From Isurus oxyrinchus (Eukaryota), in NCBI GenBank assembly GCA_026770705.1, contig JANJGN010000071.1, forward strand, positions 1,798,001 to 1,862,000: a stretch of DNA of 64,000 nt, given 5' to 3'. Below, piece by piece: positions 1,435 through 59,783 of the stretch (position 1 is the first letter of the stretch; every line of letters starts with the position of its first letter). The position numbers and the translations under genes are program-made. Under the pieces are notes generated by a model. That model searched no databases and was not told where the DNA came from. It was given only the letters and a program-made list of their open reading frames with translations.

Positions 1435-1803
1435 TTGGACTGTCACAAGAGTGGAAAGGTGACACTCCCCGAGAGGTGACAGCGCAGGAAGGTTCGTGTG
1501 GACAGATTCCATGTCATTACAGTTATCCAGCACATTTGGAAAGCCAACCGCGAGGTGGAGTCTGGTTTAATAATGAGGAACAGATCCCCTGGGCTCCCAT
1601 AGCCTTTCACTCCAAGGATCACAGTCACGAGTTACCACGGTTCCGCCATCGGACCCGGCTGTCTGGAGACCTGAAAGATGGCGACTGTTCCCTGATTATA
1701 AACAACATCAGACGGGAAGATGCAGGACCTTATTTTTTCAGAATAGAATTTGACAATGGTCCGAGCCATAACTATTATCCTGTAACCCAGCTTCACATTT
1801 CTG
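1435..1803 (+). CDS. Siglec-like gene A, V-set Ig exon V1 (intact)
   Basis: Bounded by ccag| and G|gtaag; 369 nt, phase 1/1. Encodes GLSQEW..GSCGQIPC..DGDCSLII..EDAGPYFFRIEF..NYYP. Shows the B-strand C-x4-C, E-strand Cys and F-strand Arg (no canonical F-strand Cys), which is the Siglec V-set signature. The leader exon should lie just upstream of the window, since 1-430 matches the post-leader intron at 17592-18010. Confidence 0.9.
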
Positions 1804-2273
1804 GTAAGTGCTGTGTTATAATTACTCAACAATTCACATTCAACACTCAATGGGAAATAACACAAACTGTGACGTTTACATATTAACACAAAACACAGCT
1901 TATTATAACACACTGTCTGATTCTCAATAACCTGGTGATAGCTTCCAGTTCAGTCCTAAAGCAACCTCTAATACTCACTTTAATATCAATGATGAAAAGC
2001 ATTAACTGTATTATCAGGTTATCCACTCCCATCAATCTCTCCTGTCCTGTGTAAAAGTCTGACTTATCGATAAAAGAAAGATGTGCATTTCTGCAGCACA
2101 ATTTACCACCTCAGGAGGATCCAAATCCCTTCACAGCCATTGAAATTATTCCTGAATTGTAGTCACAGATGTAAAACACAGCAGGCAGTTTGTGCACAGC
2201 AAGATCCAACAAACCACAAGGTGATAAATCACCCAGATCACTGAGGAAATGAGAAGCCAGTGAACTCAAACCT

Positions 2274-2410
2274 CTGGTCTGATGAAGAGTCATACGGACT
2301 CGAAACGTTAACCCTGTCTTCCTCTCCACTGATACTGTCAGACCTGCTGAGTCTTTCCAGCAATTTTTGTTTTTGTTTCAGATTTCCAGCATCCACAGTA
2401 TTCTGCTTTT
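2274..2410 (+). mobile_element. Penelope-like element terminus with minimal hammerhead ribozyme motif
   Basis: CTGATGA-A-GAGTC-atacg-GACTC-GAAACGTTA followed by a gacctgctgag..tttccagcatc tail. A tail-only copy lies at about 30400-30500. Confidence 0.6.
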
Positions 2411-2662
2411 AACTCCAATCTCTGGTCTGAGCCTCTTCTCTCATCCAGTGTTCTCAATTCACATGTCTCGGAGTGAACGTGTATTAAGCTGAGAGACAGA
2501 AACACTACTGCCAAAGAGCAAGAAAATCTTTCCTGATCATTGTAACCTCTCAGTTCTGATATCATCCTTGTAAAAGTGCTTTCTCTTGTGGGACTGTGAT
2601 TTCTATTTGAACTGATGCTTCACGTTATATTTCTCTAAAAGGATCCATTCTCCGTCTGTTAG

Positions 2663-2958
2663 ATTTCACAGATAAACCCACGATATTCCCTGCTGAAATT
2701 ATTGCAGGAAAGCGTGTGGATGTAAGCTGCACCTTCAACACAACGTGCAATGGAACAGCAGCACCTGTCTTAACCTGGGACACTCCCACTGACGTACCTG
2801 GATCAGTCTCAAACACTGTAACTCAGCATGGTGTCACTCTGACCTATACTTCTGTTCTGACCCTGATCCCATCACTCAAACACCACGGACACATCACAGC
2901 TGCAGAGTGAGATATCCATCTGTTTCATCGGAGCGGACCCTCGTACTAACTGTGCAAT
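2663..2958 (+). pseudogene. Siglec-like gene A, C2-set exon copy a (frameshifted)
   Basis: ttag|AT TTC ACA GAT AAA CCC (DFTDKP). 296 nt versus 297 nt in the paralogues. A 1-nt deletion near 2893 (acatcacagc vs acactctcagc) gives TGA at 2908-2910 before the F-strand Cys. Confidence 0.85.
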
Positions 2959-3164
2959 GTAAGTATGGACACCTTTCATTCTACATTAGCTAGAACAGTG
3001 TAGATAATGCACAGCAGGATCCCATAGAAAGGTATTCTGATGAGAATCAGAGAATCTGTTTTTTAGGGAAAATAGTGACCGGAACACAATTAATAACAGT
3101 TTCTGAACAGTAACACAGCGGCTTTTATTTCCAGCCAAGAGACCGATAGAGCAGAGCAGGAATC

Positions 3165-57644: not shown

Positions 57645-58362
57645 CTAAAAACAAATCAAGTGTTTAATGTGAGCAAACCTATTGCACAGCAAGACACCAT
57701 GCATCATCTCTCTGTATCTGATGTCTGAATGCATTTCCAGGTAACTTCCCTCAGGATAACGTCTTATGCCACATTTTTAATGGACACTGCCTATGTAAAC
57801 TGTCACACTGCAGTTGCATTCTCCCACCAGTAGAGGTGTTGTCCATCTAGAATGAAAGAAGCTTGCTTTCACATCCTCAGGATTTCGCAAAGGGCTGGAC
57901 AGGCAATGAATTGTATTTGATTGATGGAGCACTTAGGGGTAAATCTACAATTCTCTGTTCAGGAGGTTGCTCCATCCAATTCAGGGTCTTGTTGATCTGG
58001 AGTTTACCTTCCTTCAACACAGAATCGGAGCTGATACCAAGACTCCAGTGCGGCACTGAGAGAGGAGAGGGAACTCACGTGTGTGTATCTGTGTGTTTGT
58101 GTTTCTGCACATGTGAGTGTGTTTGTGTGTGTATGCACACATGTGTCTGTGTGTGCGCATGCACGCATGTCTGTGTGTCTAGGTCTGTCCATGAGTGAGA
58201 GTTTGTGCATGTGTGTGTCTATGTGTGGGCATGAATGTGTGTGTGTGTTTGAGATGGGTGTGTATTTTCCTGTGTATGTGCTTGTATGTGTATGACTGTG
58301 TGTGGATAATTATGCATGTGTGTGCCTACAGGTTTCTGTCAGTGTGTGTGTGTGTCTGTGTG

Positions 58363-58426
<64 letters not shown>

Positions 58427-58454
58427 AGTGATGTTGGAGTTTGCAGTAACTCAC

Positions 58455-58735
58455 GTTCCACAGTGATGGTTATGAACCCCTCCACTGCTCCATGTTCATT
58501 CTCTGCCACACACTGATAGTCTCCAGTGTCCCTGGATGTAACGTGAGGAAACACCAACCACAGCTCATTGTTGGAACTTGTTCTGTTCATTGGGACATTA
58601 AGATGTCGCCACGTCAGGTTAGAAGCTGGGAAGCTCTCGACAGAGCAGATTATCACTGCAGAATTCCCCTCAATTATATTGATCGATGAAGCGTTAATCA
58701 TATCAAGAGAATTAATTGAGAGATTCTGGGTGCGT
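58455..58735 (-). pseudogene. Gene C Ig exon, copy 2 (frameshift)
   Basis: 281 nt; 1-nt deletion just after the acceptor (acgcacc-cag vs atgctccacag). Confidence 0.8.
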
Positions 58736-59501
58736 CTAAAAGAAATAAAGATTTTAATGTGAGCAAGCATAGTGCACAGCAAGACTCCATGCATCATCTC
58801 TCTGTATCTGATGTTGGAATGCTTTTCCAGGTACCTTCCCTCATGAAAAATTACTGTCATATTTATAATGGGCACTTCCTATGTAAACTGTCACACTGCA
58901 GTTGCTTCCTCCCACCAGTAGAGTTGCTAACCCTCTAGAATGAAAGAAACATCCTTTAACACTCTCAAGATGTCCCCAAGGGCTTGATAGGCAATGAATT
59001 GCATTTGATCGATGGAGCACTGAGGGCTAAATCTACATTTCTCTGTTCAGGAGGTTGCTCATCCAATTCAGGGTCTTGCTGATCTGGAGTTTACCTTCCT
59101 TCAGCACAGAATGGGAGCTGATACCATGACTCCAGTGCAGCACTGAGAGAGGAGAGGGAGCTCACACTTGTGTGTGTACTTCTGCACGTGAGTTTGTATT
59201 TGTGTGTATGCGCGTGTCTGTNNNNNNNNNNNNNNNNNNNNNNNNNNNNNNNNNNNNNNNNNNNNNNNNNNNNNNNNNNNNNNNNNNNNNNNNNNNNNNN
59301 NNNNNNNNNNNNNNNNNNNNNNNNNNNNNNNNNNNNNNNNNNNNNNNNNNNNNNNNTATGTGTGAGTTGAGTTTGTGTGTGTTTCTGTGTATGTGTTTGA
59401 ACGTATGTTTGTGTGTAAGCGTGCATGTTTGTGTCTACACATGAGTGTTTTTGCATGTGTGAGTGTGTGTGTGAGAGATGTTGAAGTCTGTGTACACTCA
59501 C

Positions 59502-59783
59502 ATTCCACAGTGATGGTTATGAACCCCTCCACTGCTCCATGTTCATTCTCTGCCACACACTGATAGTCTCTAGTGTCCCTGGATGTAACGTGAGGAATCA
59601 CCAACCACAGCTCATTGTTGGAACTTGTTCTGTTCATTGGGACATTAAGATGTCGCCACGTCAGGTTAGAAGCTGGGAAGCTCTCGACAGAGCAGATTAT
59701 CACTGCAGAATTCCCCTCAATTATATTGATCGATGAAGCATTAATCATTTCAAGAGAAGTAAATGTGAGATTCTGTGGAGCAT
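59502..59783 (-). CDS. Gene C Ig exon, copy 1 (open)
   Basis: 282 nt, phase 1/1; APQNLTF..AVIICSVESFPASNLTW..DTRDYQCVAENEHG..ITVE. Carries a G-to-R change in the DxGxYxC motif. Confidence 0.82.

What the first reader, a model, noticed from the sequence alone, without database searches (positions are those of the whole stretch)
1435..59783. Paired activating/inhibitory Siglec-like receptor cluster in a probable cartilaginous fish
Seen: two + strand genes end in a TM exon with an intramembrane Arg (ILHVILILGIRAVIFLVAVV) and a ~12-aa Tyr-free tail. A - strand gene has an uncharged TM plus LFYANI/TEYAQI motifs, and it shares a near-identical Ig exon and 3' UTR with the + genes. Known: mammalian pairs Siglec-5/14 and Siglec-11/16 combine similar ectodomains with either ITIM tails or a basic TM residue that recruits DAP12, and they lie in inverted orientation. 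Inference: this is an independently evolved or ancient paired Siglec system. I cannot tell whether it has been described.
Basis: partly seen in the sequence, partly recalled or inferred. Interest (0 to 1): 0.88.

Follow-up and report, generated by a model that had tools for sequence, protein, structure and literature searches.

The report
Shark activating and inhibitory Siglec genes
This stretch of a shark genome holds two tandem Siglec-type immune-receptor genes that end in a membrane anchor with a buried arginine and almost no tail (the build of an activating receptor; the splice is seen in RNA), plus the rear half of an inhibitory-type relative. The design is known from mammals and is already auto-annotated in other sharks, but I found no paper that describes it.

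Summary
The V exons are Siglec V-sets: the best 18 PDB matches are all Siglecs, and the essential Arg and the three-Cys pattern are kept. RNA contigs from four runs (three studies) carry the GT..AG joints 25653>26467 (V to C2) and 26763>28358 (C2 to Arg-TM).

Corrections:
- The window holds two 16-kb tandem units. Only the second (leader 17371, V3, V4, C2, Arg-TM) is fully open. The first has a frameshifted C2 exon and a frameshifted V exon that must be skipped.
- The "shared Ig exon" is only the 3' half of that exon on the + strand, an unspliced relic. The shared 3' UTR is 81% identical, not near-identical.
- The - strand gene shows three Ig exons (one with a stop, one frameshifted), an uncharged TM and an ITIM/ITIM-like tail. 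It has no V or C2 exon in the window, so a true pair is not shown here.
- Its orientation rests on scaffolding across four gaps.

The Arg-TM exon is conserved in Carcharodon, Scyliorhinus and Chiloscyllium RefSeq models. In Carcharodon, activating and inhibitory forms share about 90% of the ectodomain. This scan had already noted the same exon on other DNA of this genome. The adaptor and the ligand are untested.

The parts
1435..1803 (+). V1: open Siglec V-set exon of tandem unit 1, essential Arg kept (YFFRIEF). The unit's leader exon lies before the window start.
   Evidence: Positions 1-422 match 17593-18011, just downstream of the unit-2 leader.
2663..2958 (+). C2a: C2-set exon broken by a 1-bp deletion (frameshift to TGA). 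The last exon base is changed from G to T.
   Evidence: DNA alignment with C2b and C2c.
8698..9062 (+). V2: V-set pseudo-exon with a 4-bp deletion 57 nt into the exon and the second B-strand Cys changed to Phe. Read in phase, it runs into TAG.
   Evidence: alignment of the four V exons.
10378..10674 (+). C2b: open C2-set_2 exon of unit 1.
   Evidence: It is 98.3% identical to C2c, against 92.5-93.3% in the introns between the exons and the 3' UTR (85.5% upstream of the C2 exon).
10996..11148 (+). Relic: 3' half of the membrane-proximal Ig exon, with no acceptor. It is skipped.
12269..12408 (+). TM1: coding part of the terminal exon, D-SGGEILHVILILGIRAVIFLVAVVITITGVCVW-ERQTVKGSRQTV*. The 3' UTR runs on to about 13730.
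17371..17410 (+). Leader exon of unit 2 (MIGKSYFLLSLLQ, phase-1 donor). It is the only leader in the window.
   Evidence: It is the same leader as in the shark RefSeq models P0003, P0008 and P0175.
21828..22205 (+). V3: open V-set exon with the essential Arg replaced by Thr (YFFTIKF) and a divergent C-C' region.
25285..25653 (+). V4: open V-set exon with the Arg kept. It is spliced to C2c in RNA contigs.
   Evidence: (joint 25653>26467 in 4 runs).
26467..26763 (+). C2c: open C2-set_2 exon of unit 2.
27087..27239 (+). Relic half Ig exon of unit 2, not spliced in the joints listed.
28358..28497 (+). TM2: Arg-TM and 12-residue tail. The terminal exon's 3' UTR is covered by contigs to at least 29816.
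   Evidence: joint 26763>28358 with GT..AG in 4 runs.
59502..59783 (-). Ig exon copy 3 (Ig_3/I-set type), open, phase 1-1.
58455..58735 (-). Ig exon copy 2: a 1-nt deletion 7 nt into the exon shifts the frame.
57363..57644 (-). Ig exon copy 1: in-frame TAG (TTG>TAG).
56449..56545 (-). Uncharged TM exon of the inhibitory-type gene (RDSSKWTVGLFTAGIMLSVFLAGIFIFICVRK).
55489..55570 (-). Cytoplasmic exon 1 (KRKTAMEERVSGTSDIVLTPSPLSVKHQ).
   Evidence: It matches Cetorhinus P0003 and Carcharodon P0013.
54325..54573 (-). Last coding exon, with ITIM LFYANI and ITIM-like TEYAQI, then the stop.

Best explanation
The window is a slice of a large, fast-turning-over cluster of CD33-like Siglec genes of a shark. 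The closest matches are lamniform (Carcharodon, Cetorhinus).

On the + strand lie two 16-kb tandem duplicates of an activating-type gene:
- Unit 2 reads leader, V3 (Arg lost), V4 (Arg kept), C2, then a terminal exon. That exon encodes a transmembrane helix with an arginine about ten residues in from the outer face and a 12-residue tyrosine-free tail.
- Unit 1 has the same C2 and TM exons and an open V1. It also carries a broken C2 exon and a broken V exon, which would have to be skipped.

On the - strand lies the 3' module of an inhibitory-type gene: membrane-proximal Ig exons, an uncharged TM, and a tail with an ITIM and an ITIM-like motif.

Shown here: the exon anatomy, Siglec family membership, the V-to-C2 and C2-to-Arg-TM splices, conservation of the Arg-TM exon among sharks, and stronger conservation of the exons than of the introns.

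Inferred:
- The Arg-TM receptors reach the surface and signal only together with an ITAM adaptor that has an acidic TM residue (DAP12 or FcR-gamma type).
- The ITIM forms recruit SHP-type phosphatases.
- Both forms read sialylated ligands through the V-set Arg.
- The activating form arose within sharks, independently of the primate Siglec-5/14 and Siglec-11/16 pairs.
For: Siglec membership:
- Pfam gives V-set plus Ig_CD22 on the V exons and C2-set_2 on the second exon.
- With V4, the best 18 PDB sequences are all Siglecs (Siglec-7 at 1.3e-13 down to Siglec-15 at 2e-8). FFRIE aligns with Siglec-7 FFRME, and all three Cys are aligned.
- With the two-domain Carcharodon model P0176, CD33 scores 1e-26, MAG 2e-24 and Siglec-5 2e-23. 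The first non-Siglec hit scores 8e-9.

Splicing:
- GT..AG joints 25653>26467 and 26763>28358 appear in 4 runs from 3 studies.

Conservation of the Arg-TM exon:
- S. torazame XP_072325011 reads ...IVQ|DSGGENLDVILILGIRAV...RQTV.
- The same exon ends S. torazame XP_072326180, Chiloscyllium XP_072409577, three Carcharodon models and two S. canicula models.
- Between the two tandem copies the TM coding part is 99.3% identical and the C2 exon 98.3%. The introns between the exons and the 3' UTR are 92.5-93.3% identical.

Paired design at family level:
- Carcharodon P0176 (Arg-TM) and P0157 (ITIM tail) lie on the same 1.8-Mb scaffold.
- They share about 90% of V and C2 and diverge exactly at the C2|TM exon boundary.

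Inhibitory tail:
- The window's tail matches the Cetorhinus model at 81% and the Carcharodon model at 70%.
- The two-motif pattern recurs in skate, sawfish, bowfin and a mammalian Siglec-9.
- Loose ends at 27241 and 27239 show inhibitory-type Ig-to-TM and Ig-to-Ig splices somewhere in the transcriptome.
Against: - The runs are Logan contigs laid at 93% likeness or more. The joints may therefore come from near-identical paralogues, of which this genome has many.
- Unit 1 contains two frameshifted exons, and the - module contains two disabled Ig exons.
- No V or C2 exon of the - gene is in the window.
- No adaptor was examined. A 2014 survey found no FcR-gamma in the shark data then available (PMC4016189).
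- V3 lacks the sialic-acid Arg.
- Nothing here tests ligand binding or signalling.
Confidence: 0.75

Rival explanations
1. Birth-and-death debris. The copies in this window are dead or dying duplicates: unit 1 and the - strand module are pseudogenes and perhaps unit 2 as well. The RNA signal would then come from intact paralogues elsewhere in the cluster.
For: - There are frameshifts in V2 and C2a.
- One - strand Ig exon has a TAG and another a frameshift.
- LINE fragments abut V2 and V4, and large 33-bp arrays fill the introns.
- The contigs were laid at 93% or more, so they cannot be assigned to one paralogue.
- Many copies of the same TM exon were noted elsewhere in this genome.
Against: - Unit 2 has every exon open with consensus splice sites.
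- The C2 and TM exons of both units are 98-99% identical against about 93% for the flanking introns and the 3' UTR, as expected under constraint or ongoing conversion.
- All broken exons are phase 1-1 and can be skipped without loss of frame.
Confidence: 0.2
2. The Arg-TM forms are not adaptor-coupled activators. They could be tailless decoys or ligand sinks, or the arginine could serve another membrane partner or regulate retention.
For: - No adaptor has been shown.
- The tail has no motif.
- A 2014 survey found no FcR-gamma in sharks (PMC4016189).
Against: - A lone basic residue inside the TM with a very short tail is the established signature of DAP12- or FcR-gamma-coupled receptors. This rests on general knowledge, for example Siglec-14, -15 and -16 (PMC7226832 introduction).
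- The GIRA core is invariant across three shark orders while the neighbouring TM residues vary.
Confidence: 0.1
3. The receptors are Siglec-like by descent but not sialic-acid lectins. The family may have moved to protein or other ligands, so 'paired Siglec' would be a name only.
For: - V3 has lost the Arg.
- Multi-V architectures are unusual for Siglecs.
- No binding data exist.
Against: V1 and V4, and most shark homologues, keep the Arg, the flanking FF.IE motif and the Cys triad.
Confidence: 0.15

Closest known systems
Human Siglec-5 / Siglec-14 and Siglec-11 / Siglec-16 paired receptors
   Same: Linked genes with similar V-C2 ectodomains. One form has an ITIM plus ITIM-like tail. The other has a basic TM residue and a short tail.
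   Different: - The origin is independent, in sharks rather than primates.
- Ectodomain identity between the forms is about 90% in Carcharodon, not near-identity.
- The shark activating genes here carry two V exons and a relic half Ig exon.
- The partner adaptor is unknown.
CD33 (Siglec-3) and other mammalian CD33-related Siglecs
   Same: - Best two-domain PDB match (1e-26).
- V-set plus C2-set_2 layout.
- Proximal xxYAxx and distal [TN]EY[AS]x[IV] tail motifs.
   Different: - Identity is only about 30-40%.
- Orthology to the CD33-related subgroup rather than to MAG-like Siglecs is not resolved.
- The cluster sits beside a hepcidin exon. From my own knowledge, that is the neighbourhood of MAG and CD22 in human, not of the CD33 cluster.
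RefSeq automatic models in other sharks (S. torazame XP_072325011 and XP_072326180; Chiloscyllium XP_072409577; Carcharodon 'CD33-like' and 'Siglec-12' models P0176, P0173, P0174)
   Same: The same leader, V, C2 and Arg-TM exons and the same C2|TM junction. V4 is 91% identical to P0176.
   Different: These are unannotated as to function and are named after the best human hit. The window's copies are further paralogues or orthologues with their own broken exons.
Siglec-15
   Same: An activating Siglec with a basic TM residue, conserved from fish to mammals (PMC7226832).
   Different: - Siglec-15 has Lys, not Arg, and a different V domain (2e-8 against 1e-13 for CD33-type).
- It is a single conserved gene, not a member of an expanding cluster.

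Membership tests
Siglec (I-type lectin) family | N-terminal V-set Ig domain with the conserved F-strand arginine that binds the sialic-acid carboxylate | tested here: met
   V1 and V4 read DAGPYFFRIEF, aligned to Siglec-7 DAGRYFFRME. V3 has Thr instead.
Siglec (I-type lectin) family | Unusual cysteine pattern: two Cys in strand B (C-x4-C) and one in strand E, with an extra Cys in the next domain for an inter-domain bond | tested here: met
   GSCVQIPCHYSYP and GDCSLII align with the Siglec-7 and Siglec-5 cysteines. The C2 exon has three Cys. The disulfide bonds themselves were not modelled.
Siglec (I-type lectin) family | Closest sequence relatives are Siglecs rather than other IgSF families | tested here: met
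   The top 18 (V4) and top 20 (V-C2) PDB sequences are Siglecs. Pfam PF24518 Ig_CD22 is above its cut-off on V1, V3 and V4.
Siglec (I-type lectin) family | Binds sialylated glycans | not testable with these tools
   This needs glycan-array or cell-binding assays.
CD33-related Siglec subgroup | Cytoplasmic membrane-proximal ITIM plus membrane-distal ITIM-like motif | tested here: met
   The - strand tail has LFYANI and TEYAQI 17 residues apart. The same pair occurs in the ray, bowfin and mammalian proteins compared.
CD33-related Siglec subgroup | Groups with CD33-related Siglecs, not with MAG, CD22, Siglec-1 or Siglec-15, in a phylogeny | not tested
   No curated MAG, CD22, Siglec-1 or Siglec-15 sequences were available as tool-given ids. 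The bit scores are close: CD33 97, MAG 90, Siglec-5 86.
Paired activating/inhibitory receptors | Activating member has a basic residue inside the TM helix and a short tail without signalling motifs | tested here: met
   It is conserved in eight RefSeq models from three shark orders.
Paired activating/inhibitory receptors | Linked genes with highly similar ligand-binding domains and opposite tails | tested here: inconclusive
   Within the window the inhibitory gene shows no V or C2 exon. In Carcharodon, the two forms on one scaffold share about 90% of V-C2.
Paired activating/inhibitory receptors | Activating member associates with an ITAM adaptor through the TM charge | not testable with these tools
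   No shark adaptor sequence was at hand, and complex prediction offers no such reference.

The most novel reading that the evidence does not exclude
CD33-type Siglecs are not a mammalian invention. Under this reading, V plus C2 receptors with a two-motif ITIM tail, diversifying in clusters and spinning off charged-TM activating twins, were already present at the hepcidin-linked ancestral Siglec locus of early jawed vertebrates. They persist in elasmobranchs, and relatives remain in bowfin and gar, while teleosts lost them. Sharks then built their own activating counterpart with a dedicated Arg-TM exon that has been kept for well over 100 million years.
Probability: 0.4. Interest if true: 0.7.

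Novelty: new member of a known kind. Interest (0 to 1): 0.5.

Why it matters
Reviews of fish Siglecs list only Siglec-1, CD22, MAG and Siglec-15 and say that fish lack inhibitory CD33-related Siglecs (PMC7226832). A transcribed shark cluster with CD33-type tails and activating twins would move the activating/inhibitory Siglec logic back to cartilaginous fish. It would also give a second, independent case of paired-receptor evolution to compare with primates. Finally, it raises a concrete question: which ITAM adaptor do sharks use? Automatic annotation has already exposed the genes, so what is missing is interpretation and experiment, not discovery of the sequences.

Tried and rejected
1. Is the half Ig exon spliced into the + genes? 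No joint into or out of it is listed. The only nearby AG (AACAG|A) would be phase 2 against a phase-1 donor. The high depth there comes from full-length paralogous exons, as the loose ends at 27087 show. Rejected.
2. Is there a relic of the ITIM exon between the Arg-TM exon and the shared 3' UTR? A sensitive blastn found none.
3. Are there V or C2 exons of the - gene in the window? tblastn with V4, C2c and eight shark proteins found only + strand copies.
4. Is the Arg-TM exon present in rays or non-shark proteins? None was found among the 276 proteins fetched, but that sample is small.
5. A literature search for shark Siglecs or shark DAP12 found no specific paper.
6. No V-domain tree with named MAG, CD22, Siglec-1 and Siglec-15 was built, because no tool-given reference sequences were available.
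The joined protein was not assembled, searched or folded.
8. The gaps were neither filled nor looked up.
9. Complex prediction and structure prediction were not used. No adaptor sequence was available, and the sequence matches were already clear.
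Full report
**What the window is.** It is 64 kb of vertebrate DNA with 46% G+C and six N runs. It is crowded with 33-bp and 37-bp tandem arrays and LINE reverse-transcriptase fragments. With the arrays masked, a self-comparison shows repeated Ig-exon blocks and a 3.6-kb duplicate, 10131-13792 against 26219-29879, at 93% identity.

**Checking the observation.**
- The Arg-containing TM is encoded at 12283-12342 and 28372-28431 on the + strand.
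- LFYANI and TEYAQI lie at 54429-54343 on the - strand.
- The TM exons start at 12269 and 28358 after a good acceptor. They read D-SGGEILHVILILGIRAVIFLVAVVITI(T/A)GVCVW-ERQTVKGSRQTV-stop.

**Family.**
- The four + strand V exons hit Pfam V-set and PF24518 (CD22-like first Ig). The next exon hits C2-set_2. The third exon type hits Ig_3/I-set.
- With V4 as query, the best 18 distinct PDB sequences are all Siglecs: Siglec-7 1.3e-13, Siglec-5, Siglec-8, sialoadhesin, CD33, Siglec-10, MAG, and Siglec-15 at 2e-8. CD22 follows at 3e-4.
- The alignments put FFRIE on Siglec-7 FFRME, where the essential Arg lies. They also match the C-x4-C and third cysteines.
- A two-domain shark model gives CD33 1e-26, MAG 2e-24 and Siglec-5 2e-23. 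The first non-Siglec hit is at 8e-9.
The subgroup (CD33-related or MAG-like) stays open.

**Organism.**
- An exhaustive HMMER search found 1168 relatives. All close ones are RefSeq models from sharks and rays, named Siglec-8, -12, -13, -14, CD33-like or MAG-like.
- The nearest are lamniform. V4 is 91% identical to a Carcharodon model. A 20-residue upstream ORF in the leader exon is identical to the start of a Carcharodon isoform. The inhibitory tail is 81% identical to the Cetorhinus model.
- The closest non-chondrichthyan relatives, at about 38-41% identity, are gar and bowfin genes, a catfish gene and mammalian CD33-related Siglecs.

**Gene anatomy, + strand.** There is one leader exon in the window, at 17371-17410 (MIGKSYFLLSLLQ, phase 1). 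Positions 1-422 match the DNA just after it, so the first unit's leader lies just before the window. This gives two tandem units.
- Unit 1 holds V1 (1435-1803, open), C2a (2663-2958), V2 (8698-9062), C2b (10378-10674, open) and TM1.
  - C2a has a 1-bp deletion and a frameshift.
  - V2 has a 4-bp deletion and a frameshift, and one Cys has become Phe.
- Unit 2 holds the leader, V3 (21828-22205, open, Arg to Thr), V4 (25285-25653, open), C2c (26467-26763) and TM2.
- Carcharodon RefSeq models with V-V-C2-ArgTM and V-C2-ArgTM layouts exist. Both a two-V and a one-V product are therefore plausible.
- Between the two units the C2 exon is 98.3% and the TM coding part 99.3% identical. The introns between the exons and the 3' UTR are 92.5-93.3% identical. 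This points to constraint or conversion on both copies.

**RNA.** One search found runs holding parts of 25200-29800. Contigs of four runs, from three studies and two coded organisms, were laid on 24400-29900 at 93% or more.
- All four runs carry GT..AG joints 25653>26467 and 26763>28358.
The first shows that the C2 exon starts 9 nt earlier than predicted, giving ...VS|DFTDKP..., as in the shark proteins.
- Depth peaks on the exons, and contigs cover the 3' UTR to 29816.
- These are contigs, and paralogues abound. The joints therefore prove that this splice exists for this gene or a near-identical copy. They do not prove that this very locus is expressed.

**The 'shared Ig exon'.**
- On the - strand there are three tandem copies in an array of about 1.05-kb units.
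- On the + strand only the 3' half is present (10996-11148 and 27087-27239). Homology stops abruptly inside the exon.
- No listed joint uses it. Contigs that overlap it continue leftwards into the canonical 5' half, and rightwards into the inhibitory TM exon or another Ig exon. They therefore come from other genes.
- Other sharks have Ig-Ig-ArgTM genes. The relic is probably what remains of such a stalk exon after a deletion.
- The shared 3' UTR block is 170 bp at 81% identity. No relic of the ITIM exon lies upstream of it.

**The - strand gene.**
- Ig exon 59783-59502 is open. Exon 58735-58455 has a 1-nt deletion. Exon 57644-57363 has an in-frame TAG.
- There follow an uncharged TM exon (56545-56449), a cytoplasmic exon (55570-55489) and the last exon (54573-54325). 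Their phases fit, and they match the Cetorhinus and Carcharodon models.
- No V or C2 exon of this gene is in the window.
- It may be the rear of a gene that starts beyond 64000, or it may be a decaying fragment.

**Gaps.** No exon touches a gap.
- The gap at 59222-59356 lies inside the Ig-exon array, so the copy number is unsure.
- The four gaps at 46684-50788 separate the + genes from the - module. That module is also bracketed by inverted repeats, 45287-48068 against 63655-60486, up to 97.7% identical.
- The 'inverted orientation' is therefore a scaffolding statement that I could not test.

**Pairing at family level.**
- In Carcharodon, an Arg-TM model (P0176) and an ITIM model (P0157) sit on the same 1.8-Mb scaffold. 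They share about 90% of V and C2 and diverge exactly at the C2|TM exon boundary.
- The Arg-TM exon, with an invariant GIRA core, ends eight models from Lamniformes, Carcharhiniformes and Orectolobiformes.
- The two-motif inhibitory tail recurs in skate, sawfish and bowfin proteins and in a mammalian Siglec-9.

**Mechanism.**
- Shown: the anatomy, the splicing and the conservation.
- Inferred from what is established for Siglec-14, -15 and -16 and other charged-TM receptors: the arginine pairs with an acidic TM residue of an ITAM adaptor, while the ITIM tails recruit SHP phosphatases.
- Which adaptor is used is unknown. A 2014 survey found no FcR-gamma in the shark data of that time (PMC4016189).

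**Novelty.**
- No paper in the searchable library treats shark Siglecs. A fish study says that fish lack CD33-related Siglecs (PMC7226832).
- RefSeq pipelines already predict these proteins. Earlier notes of this scan report the same Arg-TM exon on several other pieces of this genome.
- I file it as a new member of a known kind, of moderate interest.

The joined step was left out, and the gaps were not filled.

Noticed in passing
window 36331-36501 (-): An open stretch ends in an eight-cysteine hepcidin-like peptide. Pfam Hepcidin scores 29 bits against a cut-off of 27. It lies between the + genes and the - module. From my own knowledge, in human HAMP is the neighbour of MAG and CD22, so this may mark the ancestral Siglec locus.
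   Followed up: partly
window 16837-16923 (+): This is an orphan exon with a good acceptor and donor. It encodes a cytoplasmic segment 81% identical to residues 268-294 of a Carcharodon CD33-like protein (P0018). That protein has a different tail (YLEM, YVNV motifs). No matching TM or later exon is nearby.
   Followed up: partly
window 17349-17410 (+): The leader exon has an upstream out-of-frame ATG. Its 20 codons are identical to the N-terminus of a Carcharodon RefSeq isoform (P0013). That model probably starts at the wrong ATG.
   Followed up: partly
window 45287-48068 vs 63655-60486: Inverted repeat arms, with 1146 bp at 97.7% identity, bracket the - strand Siglec module. One arm abuts an assembly gap. 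This may be a substrate for inversion or a scaffolding artefact.
   Followed up: no
window 24510-25258 (-) and 6300-8534 (+): LINE reverse-transcriptase fragments of one family end exactly where homology to the V-exon upstream flank begins, before V4 and V2, in opposite orientations.
   Followed up: no
window 25653>25293 (RNA contig, run X2): A contig joins the end of a V exon to the start of another V exon (TTGGACTG...). Transcripts with two V domains in tandem therefore exist in this family.
   Followed up: no
window 3170-5614, 13850-16073, 29919-30404 and others: A 33-bp tandem repeat (consensus GTACTGACCCTCTGACAGTGCAGCACTCCCTCA) forms arrays of up to 74 copies in at least eleven places. 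It creates long false ORFs on both strands.
   Followed up: no
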